Shown: positions 18,848-64,000 of the stretch, one piece after another
How positions within the stretch are numbered: the stretch's first letter is position 1
Layout: every line of letters begins with the position of its first letter
Sequence record: NC_042013.1
Strand: one strand, 5' to 3'
DNA: 64,000 bases
Made by a program: the position numbers and the translations under genes
The notes under the pieces: model-generated
Told to the model about the DNA's origin: nothing
Database searches by the model: none
Seen by the model: only the letters and a program-made list of their open reading frames with translations

Positions 18848-18923
18848 GGGTGCTTAGCTCAGTTGGTAGAGCAATCGGCTCTTAACCGGTTGGTCACAGG
18901 TTCGAACCCTGTAGCACCTACCA
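18848..18923 (+). tRNA. trnK: tRNA-Lys (anticodon CTT)
   Basis: 76-nt cloverleaf; acceptor GGGTGCT/AGCACCT, loop CT-CTT-AA, TTCGAAC T-loop, encoded CCA; upstream TTGACA and TATAAATA. Confidence 0.95.
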
Positions 18924-55648: not shown

Positions 55649-56131
55649 ATGTTATATAGCTTAAAAGACGATTCGAACAAATTAATGTTTATGTTCCAAC
55701 CTTGGTGGAAATATATGGAGGAAATTTCATATGTGCACGGGGAATCGTACAAAGATATAGATTACGAATATTTTTTACTATTTGTGGAAAAAGAAAATTT
55801 CAAAAAAGACGTATTTTTTGAAACATTTCTCCCATATATTAAAAATATTAGTTATATGCTTAGTAGTAATAAAACGGCTAATAAGAAAACGATAAAGTCA
55901 GTTTTGCAAGAAATGGACACCATAGAAACAGCAGATTACAATATCCTACCAGTCGTAATATCATATAATGAGACCTTATACGAAAACGAGGAGTCGTATA
56001 CTGGCCGGGGGGATTTTTGTATCGATATTCTTTCGACAGAAGGGGCCGAGGAGTTCGCCTTTAGATTTGAAACCGAACAAAGTCGTCAACAGTTGATTGA
56101 TGAATTGTCAAAAATTGGAATGGAGTTTTGA
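55649..56131 (+). CDS. family B protein
   Basis: LKDDSNKLMF; IDIL...FRFETEQ. Confidence 0.7.
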   Translation: MLYSLKDDSNKLMFMFQPWWKYMEEISYVHGESYKDIDYEYFLLFVEKENFKKDVFFETFLPYIKNISYMLSSNKTANKKTIKSVLQEMDTIETADYNILPVVISYNETLYENEESYTGRGDFCIDILSTEGAEEFAFRFETEQSRQQLIDELSKIGMEF

Positions 56132-56132
56132 T

Positions 56133-56633
56133 ATGCTGTTTCGCATGAAACGAGACGAAGATTATTTGCAAATGATCATGACGTCTTACTTCTCTCAATA
56201 CAACAGTACGTTACAATACTATTATGCATTGTATGATATTCATGATATTAGAAAACATCTTAATATTTTGAGGTTCCCTATTTCTAATAAAAATTTTAAT
56301 AAAATAGGGGAATGTCTGTTTCCATATCAAAAAAATCTCACTTTTTGGCAAGATGCAATCGATCCCCAACATTCGGAAGTGTCTTTTATTAAATTAATGT
56401 CCAAACTAGAACCTTTTTATATAGATGAAGATTTTGGACTAATTGCGTTTATTAGTAACGTGAACTCAGAAATATTCTCATCCGAGGATACTACCTATGC
56501 AGGTGGAAGCCATACTATCGATATTATTAGTTTGGATAGTAGAGGGGACACTTATGAACATGCCACTTTTCGTTTTGAAACTGATGAGGAGGCTGAGAAG
56601 TTATATGAAAATCTTGAGAAAACGTTTAGCTAA
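56133..56633 (+). CDS. family B protein
   Basis: RDEDYLQMI; IDII...TFRFETDEE. Confidence 0.7.
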   Translation: MLFRMKRDEDYLQMIMTSYFSQYNSTLQYYYALYDIHDIRKHLNILRFPISNKNFNKIGECLFPYQKNLTFWQDAIDPQHSEVSFIKLMSKLEPFYIDEDFGLIAFISNVNSEIFSSEDTTYAGGSHTIDIISLDSRGDTYEHATFRFETDEEAEKLYENLEKTFS

Positions 56634-56644
56634 AAAGGTACAAT

Positions 56645-57385
56645 ATGTATAAGGTTTTTACTGAGAAAAATGGGGTAGGCACTTTGTTGTTTGATTTTTC
56701 CTTTGTAAAGGATGATAATAAAACACGGGCGTTAATATTGAAAAATAGAGCTAATGATTATCTTATAGGGAAAACGTCTATTTTAGATATCAGTGATATA
56801 GGTCATCACACTTTCACTGTTACAATTCCAGCAGGAACAAAAGTATATTTTGAGGTTCAGGATTTCGATTGTTATTTATATCCGTTGGATCAACCAGATG
56901 TTTCTTTTGAACGTGTGCATGTTGATTTATACGATTATAATAAAAATTTCGCGATTGACTCTCATAGAGGGATGGTACTTGGTTCAGAAACAAAAATTAA
57001 AATAGTCAACGATGTTAATATAAAATCACCTTGTTATACCAGCAGCGAGGAAAACGACGCTATATTTGAGGAATTCGCGGAGATCGCAAAAATAGAGCTT
57101 GAGAAGGGTCTCGACAATTTGCGCAAATCATCCTTTAAAGAATTAAATCGCGTGTTGTCAGGAATTAAAGGCGGGATGTATTCTTTTGATGATGTTAAAC
57201 ATATTGGGTTTGATATGTTAACGCTTGATAAAAAAGAAATAGAATTGAGTAGGTTGTTTGGATCATCCGCTAATGGAGAAATTTTTACATATTGGAGTGA
57301 GTTGTTTTTTGATAGCAATAATGACAGTATTGTGTTAGATATCCCTAATGACGAGGTAAGGTTTGAATTGGTGGATCATGTATAA
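56645..57385 (+). CDS. hypothetical protein (paralogue of 57378-58049)
   Basis: GVGTLL; TIPAGTKVYFE. Confidence 0.72.
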   Translation: MYKVFTEKNGVGTLLFDFSFVKDDNKTRALILKNRANDYLIGKTSILDISDIGHHTFTVTIPAGTKVYFEVQDFDCYLYPLDQPDVSFERVHVDLYDYNKNFAIDSHRGMVLGSETKIKIVNDVNIKSPCYTSSEENDAIFEEFAEIAKIELEKGLDNLRKSSFKELNRVLSGIKGGMYSFDDVKHIGFDMLTLDKKEIELSRLFGSSANGEIFTYWSELFFDSNNDSIVLDIPNDEVRFELVDHV

Positions 57386-58049
57386 ATTAGATTTTTCTGA
57401 AGAAGGTGTTGGAACCACCTTAAATGATATGATTGTAAAACCATCCGTTAGAAAATGGCATACAACGTCACGCGTCGTTATACCCAAAGGAACCAAAGTT
57501 TATTTTGAACGCCATAATGGAAGTTCAAACCGTCAATTTGTTAGTAAAATCATTCCGTTAGATTCAGAACTTAAAACAACAGAATATACGCTTGGTATGG
57601 TTTCTACTGGAGGGATTCGTACGGCATCTGGTGTGGTTCTGGTTGGATTGACGAGGTATAAAATTGTAAATGAGGTATATGGAATGTCTAACGATGTTCC
57701 TTATACGGATACCCCTGAAAATAACAAAATTTTAAAAGATTTTGAGGATAGATCAAAAGCCAGTATTGAAAAATGGCAACAATATATGACAAAAATGTAT
57801 TTTGAAGAAATAGAAGAAGATATTTCCAAAATACGTAGTGGGACGGTTGGTAAAGATTTGTATGAATATCCCCTTCCGCCATGTCCACCCATGAAAGAGA
57901 ATTTAAGATTTAAAGCGGATTTGCGAGATTATGAATTTATATGGGATTTTAATCTGGATGGAATGTTTAAGACAATATCAGAAAACTATATAAAAGTAGA
58001 GGGTGAACCTGACATATATGTGGAGATTGTAGATGATACCTTTGTCTGA
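57378..58049 (+). CDS. hypothetical protein (paralogue of 56645-57385)
   Basis: GVGTTL; VIPKGTKVYFE. Confidence 0.72.
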   Translation: MYKLDFSEEGVGTTLNDMIVKPSVRKWHTTSRVVIPKGTKVYFERHNGSSNRQFVSKIIPLDSELKTTEYTLGMVSTGGIRTASGVVLVGLTRYKIVNEVYGMSNDVPYTDTPENNKILKDFEDRSKASIEKWQQYMTKMYFEEIEEDISKIRSGTVGKDLYEYPLPPCPPMKENLRFKADLRDYEFIWDFNLDGMFKTISENYIKVEGEPDIYVEIVDDTFV

Positions 58050-58455
58050 TGATAATAAACTAATTTACCTGCTTGGTTCTAAAGATTTCGATGATACATA
58101 TAATTTTCATATGAAAAATAATATGGACGGATGCTTTAATGTATCAGAATATGTTTTTCATACTGACTATGACGATTTTAATTTCGGATATCTGGAATCT
58201 GTTTTTAGTTATCATATGCATAATAATTGTCCAGTTTCACCGTTCATTGTTAACGATGAAAAATTTGTATTATTATTAACATTTGATGTTAAATTTAATA
58301 CAGCAATGCCGGTTAAACACGGTTATGAGGTTGTTGGGTCTGATGAACGTAGAATGTTTATAATTTTTGACACAAAAGAAGAATATGAATACCAACTAGA
58401 AATTATTAAAAGCTACCTTAAAAAACCATTTGACATTGAAGACGAGGTTGTATAA
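58033..58455 (+). CDS. family B protein
   Basis: LSDDNKLIYL; IIFDTKEEY. Confidence 0.68.
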   Translation: MIPLSDDNKLIYLLGSKDFDDTYNFHMKNNMDGCFNVSEYVFHTDYDDFNFGYLESVFSYHMHNNCPVSPFIVNDEKFVLLLTFDVKFNTAMPVKHGYEVVGSDERRMFIIFDTKEEYEYQLEIIKSYLKKPFDIEDEVV

Positions 58456-58486
58456 TATGTATTCATAACAAGAGGAAAGGAAAATT

Positions 58487-58705
58487 ATGAAGAACGTAAT
58501 TCTTGCAATTATCGGAACGGTTGTTCTTTCTTCTTGTACTGTTTATGTAGACGGCGTTGAACCAGTATATGATCACCGTGTTTACGTAAACCGCTATGAA
58601 TACCGTCCTTATGTTAATCGTGAGTATGGTCCGCGTTATGGTTCTTATGGTAATCCGTATCAGCGTCGTTATTTTGAACGTTGCGGATACCATTGCGTTC
58701 GATAA
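58487..58705 (+). CDS. small lipoprotein with Y/R/P/G-rich tail
   Basis: Lipobox LSSC at residue 17; GAGGAAAGG RBS; upstream TTGACA...TATAAT. Confidence 0.72.
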   Translation: MKNVILAIIGTVVLSSCTVYVDGVEPVYDHRVYVNRYEYRPYVNREYGPRYGSYGNPYQRRYFERCGYHCVR

Positions 58706-58712
58706 CAAATAT

Positions 58713-58787
58713 GGGAGTGTGGCTGACTGGTAAAGCAGATGCCTTCAAAACATTGAGATGCGGGTTCGATTCCTGTCACTCCCACCA
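58713..58787 (+). tRNA. tRNA with anticodon TCA (opal/UGA suppressor type)
   Basis: 75-nt cloverleaf GGGAGTG/CACTCCC, loop CT-TCA-AA, 5-nt variable loop, TTCGATT T-loop, A73 and encoded CCA; C31-A39 mismatch. Confidence 0.85.
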
Positions 58788-58806
58788 TTTATTCAGGTAA
58801 ATCAAA

Positions 58807-59346
58807 ATGGAAATGTATCATTTAAAACATCAATCTAAAGGATTTGTGAAACAAAACGGAACCTTTGGTAGTGATGATCGCCTTTATAAAACCCCGAAAA
58901 AAGTTTCGTGGGCGGCGAAGATACATTATGCCAATACTTTCAAATATGCAACTTGTCGTGTTCGCTTTCGTGATCTTATCGACACTGTCTTGGTTGACGC
59001 GAATTCCAACGTGATTAGCCAACAAAAGCCGTCCGTTGAAATTCTTCGACAAATAGCATTTACATATGGATATTTTAGTCCTAATCAAATATCTGCGTAT
59101 GATGTTTATAACTATGCGAAAAATGTTTTAGGCGTTGTTGTAGACGAGTACCTGTATAGTAGAGAACCGTTGCATATAAACGCAGACCCCGGTGACTATT
59201 ATTCTCAAAACGGGTATCGATTTTTTAAAAATGACGAGGATGCCCTTATGACATCTCTCGCTAATCCTTCTGTTGAACTTTTTAAAATTTCAACAATAAT
59301 AGATACAGTTGATAATTACATACTAAGGGAGCTTGAAGGTGTTTGA
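58807..59346 (+). CDS. hypothetical protein
   Basis: C-terminal FFKNDEDAL motif. Confidence 0.7.
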   Translation: MEMYHLKHQSKGFVKQNGTFGSDDRLYKTPKKVSWAAKIHYANTFKYATCRVRFRDLIDTVLVDANSNVISQQKPSVEILRQIAFTYGYFSPNQISAYDVYNYAKNVLGVVVDEYLYSREPLHINADPGDYYSQNGYRFFKNDEDALMTSLANPSVELFKISTIIDTVDNYILRELEGV

Positions 59347-59641
59347 TGTACTGGTGTCCGAGGGTGTGTTTCTTAAAAACACCTATTATAGAGTTTCATT
59401 TCTCTTAACAACTACGTATAACAAAATGGAAGAATTTAAAAAACTTCGTTCACGTTTCGAGGACGAAATGACCGACATGATTGGCGAAAAAATAGCATTT
59501 ACCGAAATAGATACGTATGACTTGAATACGTCACGATCAGCAACGTGGTTTAGGATTGGCGGTACTTATTATTTTACAAATAAAGAATACGCGGTCCACG
59601 CCAATTTTATAGCAGGGATTATCAAAAATGAATTTAGCTGA
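59333..59641 (+). CDS. hypothetical protein
   Basis: YYFTNKEYA motif. Confidence 0.65.
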   Translation: MKVFDVLVSEGVFLKNTYYRVSFLLTTTYNKMEEFKKLRSRFEDEMTDMIGEKIAFTEIDTYDLNTSRSATWFRIGGTYYFTNKEYAVHANFIAGIIKNEFS

Positions 59642-60041
59642 TTTTTACATTGATGATTTTGTAGTATTTGACGCACCGAGTCTTACTAAAGAAACGGTTG
59701 TAGGATATATTGAGGAAAACATTTTATCAAAACTTTTTTCCGAGTGGGAACTGGTAGAATTGAATGAGATGTTTGAAGTTCAAGAAAGCGACCGTATAGT
59801 TGAGTGGCATAATGATTCCAAATGGGGAATGAATGTAACGTTCTTATATTATATGTCAGATATGTCTCCTGAAGTTGGTGGATCGATTAGTATCAGAAAT
59901 GGTGTTGATGAAACAAAAATTTATCCAAAAAAAGGTACATTGATAATGATGAGCCAAAAGAAACATGTTGAACACAAGGCAGAATATGCTAAAGTGAAAA
60001 GACATATGTTCAATATTGATTTTGATGTGAAAGGTTATTAA
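59628..60041 (+). CDS. 2OG-Fe(II) oxygenase (prolyl-hydroxylase-like)
   Basis: WHND (HxD), FLYY, GG.I, P..G, distal H in VEHKA, then R. Confidence 0.82.
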   Translation: MNLADFYIDDFVVFDAPSLTKETVVGYIEENILSKLFSEWELVELNEMFEVQESDRIVEWHNDSKWGMNVTFLYYMSDMSPEVGGSISIRNGVDETKIYPKKGTLIMMSQKKHVEHKAEYAKVKRHMFNIDFDVKGY

Positions 60042-60042
60042 T

Positions 60043-60285
60043 ATGAAAACGGTTGGTACACCATCTAAAAGATTTAAAGGGTATCATTACTTCTTCGGTG
60101 TGAAAGACGATCTTCTTGACTGGTTCAAGGAATCCGATTTTAATATGGGCGAGGTTGATACGCTTGATAACTTCAAACCTAATGATGAGGACTTGGTTCT
60201 TGTTAAAGATGGTAACATGTATATTATTAAAGAAGAGCATGTACCTACCATTATTCTTAAATCGGTGGATGTTGTTGTAGAATGA
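60043..60285 (+). CDS. hypothetical protein
   Basis: ORF in operon. Confidence 0.65.
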   Translation: MKTVGTPSKRFKGYHYFFGVKDDLLDWFKESDFNMGEVDTLDNFKPNDEDLVLVKDGNMYIIKEEHVPTIILKSVDVVVE

Positions 60286-60530
60286 CGGTAAAACTATCGG
60301 ATAATATGTTTGCAAAAAATTTTCCATATCTTGTGGAAACTACTAAAGATGTATCGGAAAGTATTTTGGAATCAATCGATTCTGGAATAGAACTTAATGA
60401 ATTCTGGCGTATTAATGCAAACGCAGACGATTATATGTGGATGTATTATTATAACACGTTATCCGGTGAATACATCTATATGTTTAAATCTAAGGATGAT
60501 GCTCTTATTGCGTCAATGTATGCGTCTTGA
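60282..60530 (+). CDS. hypothetical protein
   Basis: YMFKSKDDAL motif. Confidence 0.65.
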   Translation: MTVKLSDNMFAKNFPYLVETTKDVSESILESIDSGIELNEFWRINANADDYMWMYYYNTLSGEYIYMFKSKDDALIASMYAS

Positions 60531-60739
60531 ATTTTAATAAAGATGATTTCACGATAGATTTGTCTTTTGAAACTGCTGACAAAATAATTGACGTTGGGAT
60601 GTACTTAACAATGACGGTTGATTATACGATTAGTTGGTCTGTTCATTCTAAAAAGATATATTGTTACAGTGAGGACGCTCTATTAGAATGTGTGTTGAAA
60701 TTGTCAGGAGGCATTGACAATATTCCAGAAATAGGTTAA
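60527..60739 (+). CDS. hypothetical protein
   Basis: TTG start; YSEDAL. Confidence 0.55.
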   Translation: MNFNKDDFTIDLSFETADKIIDVGMYLTMTVDYTISWSVHSKKIYCYSEDALLECVLKLSGGIDNIPEIG

Positions 60740-60775
60740 ACATAAATCATCGAAACGCATTTATAGGAGATAAAA

Positions 60776-60982
60776 ATGATCGTAGCTTCTTCTCATTTCA
60801 CCCGTAACGGCAACACCTTTGAAGCCTACCTCGGTGATCTTCCGTTTACCACACGTGAGGAATCCGAATATGTTTTTGTAGAAGTTGAAAAGCATCGCAT
60901 TCCGTTTAAGCGAGTTTATGGTGACACTTTCGTGTCAATTGACGCACGTTTTGAGGATGTAAAACTTCGGATTATCTCCTAA
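60776..60982 (+). CDS. small early protein
   Basis: ATCGAAAC leader at 60749 and AGGAG RBS. Confidence 0.72.
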   Translation: MIVASSHFTRNGNTFEAYLGDLPFTTREESEYVFVEVEKHRIPFKRVYGDTFVSIDARFEDVKLRIIS

Positions 60983-61305
60983 TGATATCTGATCAGGATA
61001 ATACTTTCCTGATTTTGTCAGGAAAGTATTATATTTTTGATATTGGGGTAAAGGCGGTTGGACATTGGAAGCTTCGAGGTATATATTATGTTGATAAATC
61101 CAGTACTACTGGAAAATATATCTTAGAATTGTTCGAAGATGACGTTACTTATTCCATCGATGATTCTAACAACATAATTGTATCAATATATCAGCTTGGT
61201 GAACTTAATTATTTGTGTGCCTTTGACATGGACGATTATCGTCAGGATGATTTGCAAGTATCTATAAGTAAAATATGGGAAACCGTGTTTAATGATATCA
61301 GATGA
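60982..61305 (+). CDS. family B-like protein
   Basis: ISDQDNTFLIL; YYVDK. Confidence 0.62.
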   Translation: MISDQDNTFLILSGKYYIFDIGVKAVGHWKLRGIYYVDKSSTTGKYILELFEDDVTYSIDDSNNIIVSIYQLGELNYLCAFDMDDYRQDDLQVSISKIWETVFNDIR

Positions 61306-61672
61306 CGATAAACTATATCTCATATTGAAAGACGATCTACAGCACGTTGAACAATTTTGCAACGAGTATTTTGATTATGCTGGATTGTTTTATGTTGATC
61401 GCAAAGACGAGATATACACATCAATTGTTGATAGAACGGGTACGGATAATTTAGTTACCTCAGCCGATGGGGAACCTGTTTGCGGGGTATATATTAGAAA
61501 GTATGACAAATCATTCTTTATAAAAATGTCTCGCGTGGAAGATGAGATGCATATGATAAATTCTCTTTTTTATTATATCCGTTTAAACGATGACGTTGAC
61601 CTTAGCGATAAAACGCATATTAATATTGATATGCTTGGTTCATTTGACGCTAGTTCGGGGGATTTATTTTGA
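61292..61672 (+). CDS. family B protein
   Basis: ISDDDKLYLIL; FYVDR. Confidence 0.66.
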   Translation: MISDDDKLYLILKDDLQHVEQFCNEYFDYAGLFYVDRKDEIYTSIVDRTGTDNLVTSADGEPVCGVYIRKYDKSFFIKMSRVEDEMHMINSLFYYIRLNDDVDLSDKTHINIDMLGSFDASSGDLF

Positions 61673-61878
61673 ACAACATAATGATTATGGAACGAGTACG
61701 TTATAATTCATTAATGGGTAGCAACCGTTACTTATCATCAATGATGATGCTTGATCTATTTCTGATAAAAGAGGAAGATGGCACGTATACCGTTATGAAA
61801 TCACGATATAGTGACTTATGGCCGAACGACCGTGTAGATCGTATTAAAGTTATGGAATTCTTGTTTCTAAATCAGTAA
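61669..61878 (+). CDS. hypothetical protein
   Basis: TTG start, 69 aa. Confidence 0.55.
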   Translation: MNNIMIMERVRYNSLMGSNRYLSSMMMLDLFLIKEEDGTYTVMKSRYSDLWPNDRVDRIKVMEFLFLNQ

Positions 61879-62147
61879 CGATTAGAATCTTTTTCGCATT
61901 TGTGCCATTTCATTTCATACATTTCTTGATCAATCTTTCCATAGCAAATACCTTCTTGATCAAGACGCTTGGCAACAACATCTCGAGACTCACACGCAAG
62001 TTCAACAACTGGATTGTCATCGCCAACAGTTCCGCGACAAATAGAGTTATACGCCGCATATTGACCAAGGAAATTTTCTACTTTTGCAGAAAATGCGTAA
62101 GCAGGAGTAGAAATAAGAACTATTGAAATAGCTATGATAGATTTCAT
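61872..62147 (-). CDS. small secreted four-cysteine protein
   Basis: Signal peptide ending AYA; CRG..GD...AC..R......G.CYG.....WH.C; AAGGAGG RBS. Confidence 0.75.
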   Translation of the reverse strand: MKSIIAISIVLISTPAYAFSAKVENFLGQYAAYNSICRGTVGDDNPVVELACESRDVVAKRLDQEGICYGKIDQEMYEMKWHKCEKDSNRY

Positions 62148-62201
62148 TATAACCTCCTTGGTTAAATCATAAAATCCATCATAGCTTATTTTTTTAAAAA
62201 G

Positions 62202-63104
62202 TCAAGAGAGTATTCCGCCAACTTTACTCATAACTTTGTTTGCACCATTGGTCATTAGACCGCCAATGATAGATTGCAAACAAGGATCATTTGGTAAAAA
62301 TGACATTAGTGCTGCAAGACCCATCTTTGCCATATTCAACATACCCATTACGAAATTCATAATTTCTTGTTGAATTTTAGCAAGAATCTGTTGTGCCATT
62401 TGCATAAGCTGTGCCATAGCTTGCTGAATCATTGCCATAGCTTGCTGAACCATTCCTTTAAGGTTGTTCAACGCACCCATAAGCTGACCAAGAAGTTGCT
62501 GACCTGCCTGAAGTAATGACCCTAAGAAATCACCAAATGGAATACAAGGCGAGCCACCTCCAGCGCCGCCGAGACCGGTTCCTTGACCTAAGCCGTTAAC
62601 AGCAGAATTATTACCGATGGAGTTTTGAATCATTCCAACCATAGAAGGGAAATTAGCAATAATTCTATCTGTGTGTTCATGATATTGGTCTAAAATGTTT
62701 CCAACTGTTCCAATATCAGTGCTTAAGCCGGGATAGTTATTATTCCAATTTTCAAGATCAATGATTTGGCCCGGTGTTGGATTTCTACCGTCGCCGGGTG
62801 TACCTTGGTTGATTATTTCTTGATATCTGTCATCAATTTCTTTAGCGACTTCCTCGAGTTCTGTTTTAATCGCATCAACCTCACACGCACGCGGGTTGTA
62901 TAAAACTCCGGTGTACGGATTGTTAGTTGGCATGCTTGTAAACACATCTTGAAAATCTGTTATAACACCAGCATCAGGTTCATTGTCCATTAGCTTGTAT
63001 AGGGATACTGTTGTATCATCTAAAGATGGGTTATAAACAGGGCTATCAAGAAGACTCGCTGTGTATACGCCATCAAGGGGATTTACATCCACATTCTCTG
63101 CCAT
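62202..63104 (-). CDS. probable virion/baseplate-region protein with Q/M-rich amphipathic C-terminus
   Basis: G-rich linker, QQAMAM repeats, PC/NDPC motifs; late-type operon. Confidence 0.55.
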   Translation of the reverse strand: MAENVDVNPLDGVYTASLLDSPVYNPSLDDTTVSLYKLMDNEPDAGVITDFQDVFTSMPTNNPYTGVLYNPRACEVDAIKTELEEVAKEIDDRYQEIINQGTPGDGRNPTPGQIIDLENWNNNYPGLSTDIGTVGNILDQYHEHTDRIIANFPSMVGMIQNSIGNNSAVNGLGQGTGLGGAGGGSPCIPFGDFLGSLLQAGQQLLGQLMGALNNLKGMVQQAMAMIQQAMAQLMQMAQQILAKIQQEIMNFVMGMLNMAKMGLAALMSFLPNDPCLQSIIGGLMTNGANKVMSKVGGILS

Positions 63105-63441
63105 CTATATGCTCCAGACCACAATCGCATCCAGATTCGTGATCGCAACAATCACAGTCGTGCGAGTGGATTTCTATGTTTTGTTCGATTGCACCATTGC
63201 TATTTAGATAAATGTTACCGTCTTCTTGACCGTTCCATTTACCACTTGTAATAGTAATATCTTTTAAAGATGAAAATGTCACGTTGCCTTCAAAATGAAT
63301 ATCTATATCACTATGAACAGTGATTTTTCCATTTTCATCAACGCTTGTCCAAAATGGTAAGAAAGAATTCTTACCACTCTGAACTGAATTGGTAGACGGG
63401 GTTTTAAACCCGTCTATAATTTTTTTGATTGCTTTAATCAT
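63073..63441 (-). CDS. gp5-C-like beta-repeat protein with Cys/His-rich tail
   Basis: GKITVHSDIDIHFEGNVTFSS...ITITSG...IYLN; 7 Cys and 4 His in last 31 aa. Confidence 0.5.
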   Translation of the reverse strand: MIKAIKKIIDGFKTPSTNSVQSGKNSFLPFWTSVDENGKITVHSDIDIHFEGNVTFSSLKDITITSGKWNGQEDGNIYLNSNGAIEQNIEIHSHDCDCCDHESGCDCGLEHIDGRECGCKSP

Positions 63442-63794
63442 CCACGACCACCTCGTGACGCATTAAGAATTTCGGGAACCGCGCCAGCAGCACTTGTATG
63501 TGATGGGTCATTGGTGACCTGAGCATAGTGGGTTGCCACGTCTTTACTAACTTCGCTATATGCAATGATAGCGGACTTGCGAATAGGAATTCGTTTCGTT
63601 TCAGGTGCACCAATAATCCAAGGAGCAAATGCTACCATTCCCTGACCGGATTGTTCATCAGGAATCATAACCATCAAAAGAGGAGTCTTTACGAGAAGCT
63701 CGTCTGTAGATGCGTCAACCGCGTGCGCCACAACCTCTTCGCCGGTAATGATCTTAAGGGTTACTACTTTGTTAACTAAATTTGATAAATCCAT
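63438..63794 (-). CDS. T4-like conserved small protein, Sm/LSm-like beta-barrel
   Basis: VVTLKIITGEEVVA ... LVKTPL ... FAPW pattern; start MDLS at 63794. Confidence 0.6.
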   Translation of the reverse strand: MDLSNLVNKVVTLKIITGEEVVAHAVDASTDELLVKTPLLMVMIPDEQSGQGMVAFAPWIIGAPETKRIPIRKSAIIAYSEVSKDVATHYAQVTNDPSHTSAAGAVPEILNASRGGRG

Positions 63795-63850
63795 TGTACG
63801 TGTCCTTTTATGGTAAGTGTATTTAGAATACCATAAAAGGTGGTAGTTTA

Positions 63851-64000
63851 TCAATAAAACATATGCGTAAATTTCAAAGGAAACGGCACAAAGGTGTCAC
63901 TTTCACTTGTATAAATGGTAATGTCAATTAGACCAGAGTAGTTCTTTTTATCATTAACGATGCCGTGGACAAATATCGAGAACACAAATAGCTCGTCAAG
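63851..64000 (-). CDS. hypothetical protein, partial (3' end only)
   Basis: Open frame from window end to TGA at 63851. Confidence 0.5.
   Translation of the reverse strand, partial: LDELFVFSIFVHGIVNDKKNYSGLIDITIYTSESDTFVPFPLKFTHMFY

What the first reader, a model, noticed from the sequence alone, without database searches (positions are those of the whole stretch)
58713..58787. Opal (UCA-anticodon) tRNA in a genome that still uses UGA as a stop
Seen: a clean cloverleaf with U33, anticodon TCA, A37, short variable loop, G1-C72 and A73, plus G27-U43 and C31-A39 in the anticodon stem. It is not tRNA-Sec (no long arm) and lacks the usual Trp determinant G73. Many genes here end in TGA within ATGA overlaps and long ORFs are intact, so the genome is not globally recoded. 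The six fibre genes and four cargo genes end in TAA, but three late-type genes at 62.2-63.8 kb end in TGA. Inference: a conditional suppressor that could sabotage host UGA termination, time read-through of specific phage genes, or act as a decoy for anticodon nucleases. The charged amino acid is unknown.
Basis: partly seen in the sequence, partly recalled or inferred. Interest (0 to 1): 0.75.

Follow-up and report, generated by a model that had tools for sequence, protein, structure and literature searches.

The report
Known opal-suppressor tRNA in jumbo phage
A real, well-formed tRNA gene that reads the UGA stop codon sits in Agrobacterium jumbo phage Atu_ph07, as the 2018 genome paper already reported; the phage's genes are not recoded, so it is at most a weak general read-through agent of unknown purpose.

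Summary
Window 58713-58787 (+) is a canonical 75-nt class-I tRNA with anticodon UCA, A73 and an encoded CCA (Rfam 60.1 bits, a typical score for this phage). The window is Agrobacterium phage Atu_ph07. Its genome paper (Attai 2018) already lists this gene as "tRNA-Sup-TCA" and notes that UGA is an abundant stop in phage and host, so the finding is not new.

New here:
- It is not tRNA-Sec and not Trp-derived. It has G1-C72/A73, against A1-U72/G73 in every reference tRNA-Trp. Its acceptor stem is of the Tyr/Leu/Val/Lys type, and its body is closest to tRNA-Leu(UAA).
- It has no orthologue in any collection searched.
- The genome is not recoded. TGA ends about 38% of ORFs, there are no extra backup stops after TGA, and no TGA-interrupted gene was found. 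In 69,207 codons aligned to the relative Phosso, the only internal stops are one TAA and one TGA in a split DNA polymerase.
- Phosso carries two unrelated CUA suppressors and is also not recoded, and phage XacN1 is reported likewise. Suppressors without recoding recur in this jumbo-phage clade.

Most likely it is a weakly charged (probably Trp) general UGA suppressor. Its function is unproven, and an inert gene remains a serious rival.

The parts
58713..58787 (+). tRNA gene with anticodon UCA (opal suppressor type); class I; 75 nt including encoded CCA
   Evidence: ARAGORN; Rfam RF00005 at 60.1 bits, E 1.7e-10; listed as tRNA-Sup-TCA in the genome paper's supplement
58745..58747 (+). anticodon U34 C35 A36, within the loop C32 U33 UCA A37 A38
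   Evidence: the A36-A37-A38 run is the context expected of tRNAs that read U-starting codons (established knowledge of MiaA substrates; not tested here)
58784..58787 (+). discriminator A73 followed by genomically encoded CCA
58430..58458 (+). best sigma-70-like promoter match in the neighbourhood (TTGACA-17-TAATAT, 10 of 12), 255 nt upstream of the tRNA
   Evidence: Such sites are only modestly enriched genome-wide (33 observed against about 22 in shuffles for one 50-kb chunk), so use of this site is inference
58487..58705 (+). 72-aa ORFan with a lipoprotein-type signal (lipobox LSSC); it ends in TAA 7 nt before the tRNA and is probably co-transcribed with it
   Evidence: no Pfam hit; no terminator-like site between it and the tRNA
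58807..59346 (+). 179-aa ORFan that starts 19 nt after the tRNA, on the same strand
   Evidence: no homologue in other phage records; no Pfam hit

Best explanation
This is a genuine, structurally ordinary elongator-type tRNA gene whose UCA anticodon pairs with the UGA stop codon. It stands alone in a run of small same-strand ORFan genes and is probably transcribed with them. The phage encodes no synthetase or release factor that I could identify for it, so it must be charged by a host enzyme. The most likely one is tryptophanyl-tRNA synthetase, which reads C35 and A36 and is indifferent to C34 versus U34. Charging should be inefficient because the tRNA has A73 and G1-C72 instead of the bacterial Trp elements G73 and A1-U72. 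It would then compete with release factor 2 and cause low-level read-through of UGA stops in general (host and phage), rather than decode a dedicated set of recoded phage genes. Shown: the gene, its structure, its non-Sec and non-Trp-derived identity elements, and the absence of recoding. Inferred: expression, charging, the inserted amino acid, and any benefit to the phage.
For: It is a real tRNA of normal quality: 60.1 bits, rank 16 of the 25 phage tRNAs scored (range 45-74), with a fully paired acceptor stem, universal tertiary nucleotides and encoded CCA. It is not a recent copy of any phage tRNA: 54-69% identity to all, and 59% to the phage's own tRNA-Trp. There is no recoding. TGA ends 322 of 831 ORFs in my set and 267 of 714 in the paper. 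Read-through extensions after TGA equal those after TAA (median 8 codons; 10.7% reach 40 codons or more in both). Backup TAA/TAG stops within 3 or 10 codons are equally frequent after TGA and after TAA (0.15 vs 0.14; 0.40 vs 0.40). Same-frame ORF pairs: TGA 14 of 322, TAA 29 of 459. Downstream ORFs of TGA pairs are complete families of their own or have their own signal peptide. Across 245 in-frame alignments (69,207 codons) to Phosso, the only internal stops are one TAA plus one TGA in the split DNA polymerase. On TrpRS: it makes extensive contacts to C35/A36 and need not tell C34 from U34, and G73A costs about 9-fold in B. subtilis (PMC12135181). Related jumbo phages also keep suppressors without recoding: Phosso has two CUA tRNAs (65 and 67 bits), TAG still ends 95 of 726 ORFs, and there are 0 internal stops in 55,307 aligned codons. 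XacN1 has CUA suppressors with no identifiable targets (PMC5852040).
Against: There are no expression, processing or charging data. The anticodon stem is weak (G.U, two A-U, one G-C, and a C.A mismatch), and an alternative fold is predicted 5.7 kcal/mol more stable than the cloverleaf. The 15-48 pair is C/U rather than purine-pyrimidine. A73 and G1-C72 are both wrong for bacterial TrpRS. All 13 reference cellular tRNA-Trp genes and the phage's own have G73 with A1 (A1-U72 checked directly in the 13). No orthologue exists in any collection searched, so purifying selection cannot be shown. The lack of any genomic adaptation to read-through fits an inert gene as well as a weak suppressor.
Confidence: 0.5

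Rival explanations
1. Inert or decaying passenger. In a phage with 33 tRNA genes, one tRNA (acquired or mutated at one anticodon base from a sense tRNA, for example a Leu-UAA-like one) reads a stop on paper but is poorly folded or hardly charged, and is tolerated because it does little.
For: It is an orphan with no orthologue and ORFan neighbours. It has a weak anticodon stem and a competing fold. Its identity elements fit no synthetase cleanly. The genome shows no adaptation to suppression. Phosso's CUA1 looks like a drifting tRNA-Trp copy: 80% identical to a tRNA-Trp, with two unpaired acceptor positions.
Against: The acceptor stem is perfectly paired, the universal nucleotides and encoded CCA are intact, and the score is typical for this phage. 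Suppressor tRNAs recur in related jumbo phages, which is more than expected from accidents alone.
Confidence: 0.25
2. Leucine-inserting suppressor. The tRNA descends from a Leu(UAA)-type tRNA (UAA to UCA is one change at position 35) and is charged by leucyl-tRNA synthetase, which ignores the anticodon and relies on A73 and the tertiary core.
For: Among 165 cellular and viral tRNAs that share the same 3' acceptor strand and A73, the isotypes are Tyr, Leu, Val and Lys, and never Trp. With the anticodon and variable arm left out, 4 of the 5 nearest tRNAs are Leu(UAA), the best at 43 of 50 positions, although Tyr outnumbers Leu about 15 to 1 in that sample. It has a 3-pair D-stem, as in class II tRNAs. 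E. coli LeuRS needs A73 and core tertiary pairs, not the anticodon (PMC6614811). Class-I tRNAs with UAA anticodon and this acceptor stem exist in viral contigs.
Against: It has no long variable arm. C15/U48 replaces the A15-U48 pair cited for E. coli tRNA-Leu. Ordinary LeuRS enzymes that charge only type II tRNA-Leu need a specialised domain to charge a type I tRNA-Leu. When the acceptor stem is left out of the comparison, no isotype stands out. The comparison set was selected by acceptor sequence, so it is biased.
Confidence: 0.12
3. Dedicated decoder. The tRNA serves a few phage genes that carry an in-frame UGA or need programmed UGA read-through, as an early or residual stage of the TGA recoding seen in gut phages.
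For: Suppressor tRNAs accompany recoding in many phages, and some standard-code relatives of TGA-recoded phages already carry a TGA suppressor (Borges et al. preprint). Over half of this phage's genes are ORFans where homology tests are blind. Annotated coding density is low at 83.6%.
Against: TGA is not depleted as a stop (about 38%), contrary to the proposed path to recoding. There is no excess of long extensions or same-frame ORF pairs after TGA. No internal TGA was found in 69,207 conserved codons except next to a TAA in the split polymerase. The candidate pair in the window is two independent genes.
Confidence: 0.07
4. Non-decoding role. The tRNA acts as a decoy or substitute that protects against host tRNA-targeting defences (anticodon nucleases), or has some other role unrelated to translation.
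For: The phage invests in tRNA maintenance: an RnlA-type RNA ligase, a CCA-adding enzyme, a Thg1-like enzyme and two peptidyl-tRNA hydrolases are annotated.
Against: From my own knowledge, the known anticodon nucleases target sense tRNAs (Lys, Tyr, Arg and others), not a UCA anticodon. Nothing in the sequence or context points to such a role. This was not tested.
Confidence: 0.05
5. Selenocysteine tRNA, as ARAGORN's label suggests.
For: Only the UCA anticodon.
Against: It has a 7/5 acceptor/T-stem geometry, a 5-nt variable loop, a short D-stem and A73. All of these differ from bacterial tRNA-Sec as I know it.
Confidence: 0.005

Closest known systems
tRNA-Sup-TCA of Atu_ph07 as published (Attai et al. 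2018, PMC6102473)
   Same: It is the same gene. The paper counts 33 tRNAs, calls one a suppressor with anticodon UCA, and notes that UGA is an abundant stop in phage (267) and host (2,923).
   Different: The paper gives no structure, identity analysis, search for targets or comparison with relatives. The GenBank record carries no tRNA feature at this site.
CUA suppressor tRNAs of related standard-code jumbo phages (Xanthomonas phage XacN1; Sinorhizobium phages Phosso and AP-J-162)
   Same: These are structurally normal stop-reading tRNAs in very large myoviruses of the same broad clade. Each genome still uses the suppressed stop, and no read-through targets can be found (AP-J-162's 'tRNA-Pyl').
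   Different: They read UAG, not UGA. They are not homologous to this tRNA: 61% identity to Phosso CUA1, whose body is Trp-like.
Suppressor tRNAs of stop-codon-recoded phages (crAss-like, Lak, Agate, Jade; Borges et al.)
   Same: A phage-encoded tRNA that reads a stop codon in a host using the standard code. TGA suppressors there are taken to insert Trp via the host synthetase.
   Different: Those phages have in-frame stops in late and lysis genes and few TGA stops, and some carry RF1 and TrpRS. Atu_ph07 has none of these features.
Bacterial tRNA-Trp and Trp-type UCA tRNAs
   Same: C35 and A36, the A37-A38 context, class I structure and G5-C68.
   Different: A73 instead of G73, and G1-C72 instead of A1-U72. 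It is 59% identical to the phage's own tRNA-Trp. In a sample of 18 viral UCA tRNAs, 11 were G73 type and 6 A73 type.
UCA tRNA on IMG/VR contig IMGVR_UViG_3300036781_000289 (locus L303)
   Same: This is the closest sequence found: 75% identity, the same GGGAGUG 5' acceptor strand, A73, 16 of 17 T-arm positions identical, and a similar small D-loop.
   Different: The D-stem, anticodon stem and variable loop differ. The contig shares no detectable protein with Atu_ph07 and also shows no TGA recoding.
Bacterial tRNA-Leu(UAA)
   Same: Identical acceptor stem and A73 in some lineages, a similar D-arm and T-arm (43 of 50 body positions), and an anticodon one base away.
   Different: tRNA-Leu has a long variable arm, and this tRNA has 5 nt.

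Membership tests
Canonical elongator tRNA (Rfam RF00005) | Full-length cloverleaf match above the curated threshold | tested here: met
   60.1 bits against gathering score 29, model positions 1-71 of 71, E 1.7e-10; within the range of the phage's other tRNAs
Canonical elongator tRNA (Rfam RF00005) | Universal nucleotides U8, A14, G18 G19, U33, the T-loop motif and G53-C61 | tested here: met
   Read from the alignment and sequence. The exception is the 15-48 pair, which is C/U
Bacterial tRNA-Sec | 8-bp acceptor stem with 5-bp T-stem, long variable arm, extended D-stem | tested here: not met
   7/5 geometry, 5-nt variable loop, D-stem of 3 pairs plus G.A. ARAGORN's label rests on the anticodon only
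Bacterial tRNA-Trp or Trp-derived opal suppressor | Anticodon positions C35 and A36 | tested here: met
   UCA anticodon; the role of C35/A36 is taken from PMC12135181
Bacterial tRNA-Trp or Trp-derived opal suppressor | Discriminator G73 | tested here: not met
   A73 here. G73 in 13 of 13 cellular tRNA-Trp genes and in the phage's own tRNA-Trp
Bacterial tRNA-Trp or Trp-derived opal suppressor | A1-U72 first pair and overall sequence similarity to tRNA-Trp | tested here: not met
   G1-C72 here; 59% identity to the Atu_ph07 tRNA-Trp and 59-68% to the Phosso tRNA-Trp genes
Suppressor tRNA of a stop-codon-recoded phage | In-frame TGA codons inside phage genes | tested here: not met
   No enrichment of same-frame pairs. 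Downstream ORFs are independent genes. One internal TGA in 69,207 aligned codons, adjacent to a TAA in a split polymerase. ORFan genes could not be tested by homology
Suppressor tRNA of a stop-codon-recoded phage | TGA rare as a true stop | tested here: not met
   322 of 831 ORFs; 267 of 714 in the paper
Suppressor tRNA of a stop-codon-recoded phage | Accompanying phage release factor or cognate synthetase | tested here: inconclusive
   None in the record's annotation or in the paper. The annotated 'threonyl-tRNA synthetase' has only a tRNA_SAD editing-type domain. I ran no systematic profile scan of all 714 proteins
Suppressor tRNA in a standard-code jumbo phage (XacN1 type, function unknown) | Structurally normal stop-anticodon tRNA in a phage that still uses that stop and has no identifiable read-through targets | tested here: met
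   comparators
Bacterial tRNA-Leu (type II) | A73 | tested here: met
Bacterial tRNA-Leu (type II) | Long variable arm and A15-U48 tertiary pair | tested here: not met
   5-nt variable loop and C15/U48; the requirements are taken from PMC6614811

The most novel reading that the evidence does not exclude
Stop-suppressor tRNAs without genome recoding are a selected, recurrent trait of the Rak2/XacN1/Atu_ph07 group of jumbo phages. Each lineage independently keeps a deliberately weak suppressor (here A73 instead of G73) that perturbs host translation termination. Over half of Agrobacterium genes end in UGA, and release factor 2 synthesis could itself be disturbed where it depends on an in-frame UGA. 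The phage tolerates the short extensions of its own proteins.
Probability: 0.15. Interest if true: 0.65.

Novelty: already known. Interest (0 to 1): 0.3.

Why it matters
The gene and its paradox, a UGA suppressor in a genome full of UGA stops, were published in 2018, so the finding adds no new object. The follow-up narrows what it can be. It is not a selenocysteine tRNA, not a mutated tRNA-Trp, and not the tool of a recoded genome. The same unexplained pattern appears in at least two other jumbo phages of the clade, with unrelated suppressor genes. If these tRNAs are active, they would be a translation-level host-takeover or regulatory device distinct from stop-codon recoding. If they are inactive, they show how large phage tRNA sets throw off suppressor by-products. 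Either answer needs expression and charging data, not more sequence analysis.

Tried and rejected
1. Orthologue searches. blastn of the tRNA against 50,697 phage records gave only weak hits to Thr, Trp and Arg tRNAs. Three IMG/VR pattern scans and one metagenome scan found no orthologue. The metagenome hits are G73 Trp-like UCA tRNAs.
2. Synteny. The flanking proteins have no homologues in other phages. The region downstream of PnuC/NadR in Phosso has no tRNA.
3. E. coli comparison. Only insignificant partial matches to tRNA-Gly, E = 7.
4. Inferring the amino acid from the closest relative's contig (L303). That contig is not TGA-recoded and is unrelated in its proteins.
5. Six-frame ORF coverage under alternative codes was too crude to discriminate.
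6. Split DNA polymerase and terminase as suppressor targets: rejected. The polymerase pieces are separated by two in-frame stops, one of them TAA. The terminase pieces are in different frames.
7. The first tblastn pass was dominated by off-frame shadow alignments. It was redone with a coding-frame filter.
8. The promoter argument is weak. The site is the best one locally, but such sites are common.
9. Isotype by nearest neighbour. The result is suggestive for Leu(UAA) only when the acceptor stem is included.

One search printed outer bounds and piece lengths of adjacent same-frame ORF pairs. These are separately annotated genes, and none proved to be a broken gene.

Full report
**Identity of the window.** Window 56000-64000 is 100% identical to Agrobacterium phage Atu_ph07 (MF403008.1 / NC_042013.1; 490,380 bp; jumbo myovirus; genus Polybotosvirus). 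Window position equals record position minus 372,000.

**The observation.** ARAGORN finds two tRNAs in the window: Lys(CUU) at 18848-18923, and one with anticodon UCA at 58713-58787. Rfam's tRNA model matches the second over its full length at 60.1 bits (E 1.7e-10) and marks only the 31-39 pair as non-standard.
CCA is encoded.
- The score is ordinary for this phage. The 25 tRNAs in two genome chunks range from 45 to 74 bits, and this one ranks 16th.
- A thermodynamic fold prefers a rearranged D/anticodon region by 5.7 kcal/mol over the cloverleaf. This reflects a weak anticodon stem. It is common for unmodified tRNA sequences, but it is a caveat.

**Already published.** The GenBank record has no tRNA feature here. 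[quoted passage not shown] It notes that UGA is abundant as a stop in the phage (267) and in the host (2,923) (PMC6102473). Its supplement lists "tRNA-Sup-TCA, 72 bp" between gp587 and gp622, which is this position. The finding as written is therefore known. No follow-up of it appears among the papers that I read.

**What kind of tRNA it is.**
- It is not tRNA-Sec. It has 7/5 stem geometry, a short variable loop, a short D-stem and A73.
- It is not a copy of any other Atu_ph07 tRNA. I fetched the whole genome in ten pieces. ARAGORN finds 31 tRNAs, mostly clustered at 300-340 kb on the minus strand, including a tRNA-Trp(CCA). Rfam adds two long, probably intron-containing ones, which gives the published 33. 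The UCA tRNA is 54-69% identical to all of them and 59% to tRNA-Trp. It lies alone on the plus strand, about 90 kb from the cluster.
- Its identity elements are not those of bacterial tRNA-Trp. All 13 cellular tRNA-Trp genes that came in with other loci have A1-U72 and G73, and the phage's own tRNA-Trp likewise begins with A1 and has G73.
- Among tRNAs that share its 3' acceptor strand and A73, isotypes in viral contigs are Tyr 48, Leu(UAA) 6 and others 6 of 60. In cellular genomes they are Tyr 89, Val 8, Leu 6 and Lys 2 of 105. None is Trp, Gly, Cys or Arg.
- With the anticodon and variable arm left out, four of the five nearest tRNAs are Leu(UAA), up to 43 of 50 positions. This signal vanishes when the acceptor stem is excluded.
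- Position 20 is U, so the Arg determinant A20 (my knowledge of E. coli identity rules) is absent.

**Which amino acid.** This cannot be settled from sequence.
- Bacterial TrpRS makes its main anticodon contacts with C35 and A36 and need not distinguish C34 from U34. G73A lowers charging about 9-fold in B. subtilis (PMC12135181).
- E. coli LeuRS depends on A73 and core tertiary pairs and not on the anticodon. Ordinary LeuRS enzymes charge a type-I tRNA-Leu only with a specialised domain (PMC6614811).
- I therefore rank Trp (inefficient) first and Leu second.

**No orthologue anywhere.** I found no similar tRNA in 50,697 phage records, IMG/VR or JGI metagenomes. The nearest sequence is a UCA tRNA on a 48-kb IMG/VR contig (L303): 75% identity, the same GGGAGUG strand, A73 and nearly the same T-arm. 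That contig shares no protein with Atu_ph07 and is not recoded. In a sample of 18 distinct viral UCA tRNAs, 11 have G73 and 6 have A73. An A73 class therefore exists but is heterogeneous.

**Is the genome recoded, or adapted to suppression?** No.
- In my ORF set, stops are TAA 459, TGA 322 and TAG 50. ORFs of 400 aa or more use TGA in 20% of cases. 142 TGA stops lie in ATGA overlaps.
- The distance to the next in-frame stop is the same after TGA and TAA (median 8 codons; 10.7% reach 40 codons or more). TAA/TAG backups are no more frequent after TGA.
- Adjacent ORFs that a read-through would fuse are not enriched for TGA: 14 of 322, against 29 of 459 for TAA.
- I scanned ten of the 14 TGA pairs against PHROGs. 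Where there are hits, the downstream ORF matches its own family end to end.
- In the window's pair (outer 61872-63104, minus strand), the downstream 91-aa ORF starts with its own Met and a signal peptide.

**The strongest test uses Phosso.** The closest relative in the phage collection searched is Sinorhizobium phage Phosso (PV764938.1; major capsid protein 73% identical), fetched whole.
- In 245 alignments lying in the true coding frame of Atu_ph07 ORFs (69,207 codons), the only stops well inside an alignment are one TAA and one TGA. Both are in the DNA polymerase (outer 211877-214846), which is one CDS in Phosso and two in Atu_ph07.
- A UCA tRNA cannot read TAA, and the second piece has its own start. 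This is a split gene, not a suppressor target.
- The terminase large subunit is also annotated in two pieces, in different frames.

**Relatives.**
- Phosso has no UCA tRNA but two CUA (amber) tRNAs. One is annotated tRNA-Pyl (65.3 bits, A73, Trp-like body, two unpaired acceptor positions). The other is annotated tRNA-Undet (67.1 bits, perfect cloverleaf, G73).
- They are not homologous to the Atu_ph07 tRNA (CUA1 61% identical; CUA2 by alignment).
- Phosso still ends 95 of 726 ORFs in TAG and shows no internal stop in 55,307 aligned codons.
- The AP-J-162 paper reports the same "tRNA-Pyl(CUA)". XacN1, in the same monophyletic group of jumbo phages, has CUA suppressors whose targets could not be found (PMC5852040). 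Klebsiella phage phiKp24 is reported with a Sup-TTA tRNA.
- Suppressor tRNAs in non-recoded jumbo phages are thus a known, recurring and unexplained pattern.
- The gut-phage model of Borges et al. has TGA depletion first, then a suppressor, then in-frame stops in late genes. It does not describe Atu_ph07, where TGA is not depleted.

**Context and expression (inference).** The tRNA lies 7 nt after the TAA of a 72-aa lipoprotein-like ORFan and 19 nt before a 179-aa ORFan, all on the plus strand. The best promoter-like site of the neighbourhood (10 of 12) is upstream of the small ORF, and there is no terminator-like site nearby. Such promoter matches are only modestly above chance genome-wide. 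The neighbours have no Pfam or phage homologues.

**Verdict.** This is a real, published opal-suppressor-type tRNA. It is not Sec, not Trp-derived and not tied to recoding. Most likely it is a weakly charged general UGA suppressor (confidence about 0.5). An inert passenger is the main rival (about 0.25), and Leu insertion is an alternative for the amino acid.

Noticed in passing
window 58487-58705 (+): A 72-aa ORFan with a lipoprotein-type signal peptide (lipobox LSSC) lies directly upstream of the tRNA and behind the best local promoter-like site. It could be a small membrane or superinfection-exclusion-type protein.
   Followed up: partly
window 18848-18923 (+): A second solitary tRNA, Lys(CUU), scoring 69.1 bits, also lies far from the main tRNA cluster and among small plus-strand ORFan genes.
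   Followed up: no
L008 23905-24023 (-) and 35108-35213 (-) (record 323905-324023 and 335108-335213): Two long (119 and 106 nt) full-length Rfam tRNA matches that ARAGORN misses, probably intron-containing tRNAs. They bring the count to the published 33.
   Followed up: partly
Atu_ph07 record 211877-214846 (-) (L006): The DNA polymerase is annotated as two CDSs. Relative to the single CDS of Phosso it carries two in-frame stops (one TAA, one TGA), and the second piece has its own start. It looks like a split gene and does not depend on the UCA tRNA.
   Followed up: yes
Atu_ph07 record 79548-81739 (-) (L003): The terminase large subunit is annotated as two adjacent CDSs in different reading frames with several stops between them. 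Phosso has a single terminase large-subunit CDS.
   Followed up: partly
Atu_ph07 record 483864-484571 (-) (L011 33864-34571): The protein annotated 'threonyl-tRNA synthetase' is 234 aa and matches only the tRNA_SAD domain, so it is more likely a free-standing editing-type protein than a synthetase.
   Followed up: partly
Phosso PV764938.1 446731-446806 (L479 46731-46806) and 171983-172058 (L483 21983-22058): Two amber-suppressor (CUA) tRNAs, annotated tRNA-Pyl and tRNA-Undet. The second lies between genes annotated as cysteinyl- and seryl-tRNA synthetase (a hypothetical-protein ORF flanks it on each side). No tRNA-Tyr was seen in this genome. TAG remains a stop, and no in-frame TAG was found in conserved genes.
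   Followed up: yes
viral loci (sequences listed): Some IMG/VR contigs carry class-I (short variable loop) tRNAs with a UAA anticodon and the GGGAGUG/A73 acceptor stem. These are type-I 'tRNA-Leu-like' genes, which are rare in bacteria.
   Followed up: no
window 61872-63854 (-): Four consecutive minus-strand ORFs all end in TGA. The 300-aa one has a weak DUF7217 match just under Pfam's cut-off (28.8 vs 29 bits) and a methionine/glutamine-rich C-terminal half. The 91-aa one is a small secreted protein.
   Followed up: partly
MF403008.1 whole record: All 714 annotated features are CDSs. None of the 33 tRNAs described in the paper is annotated in the GenBank record, so automated users of the record will miss the suppressor.
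   Followed up: yes
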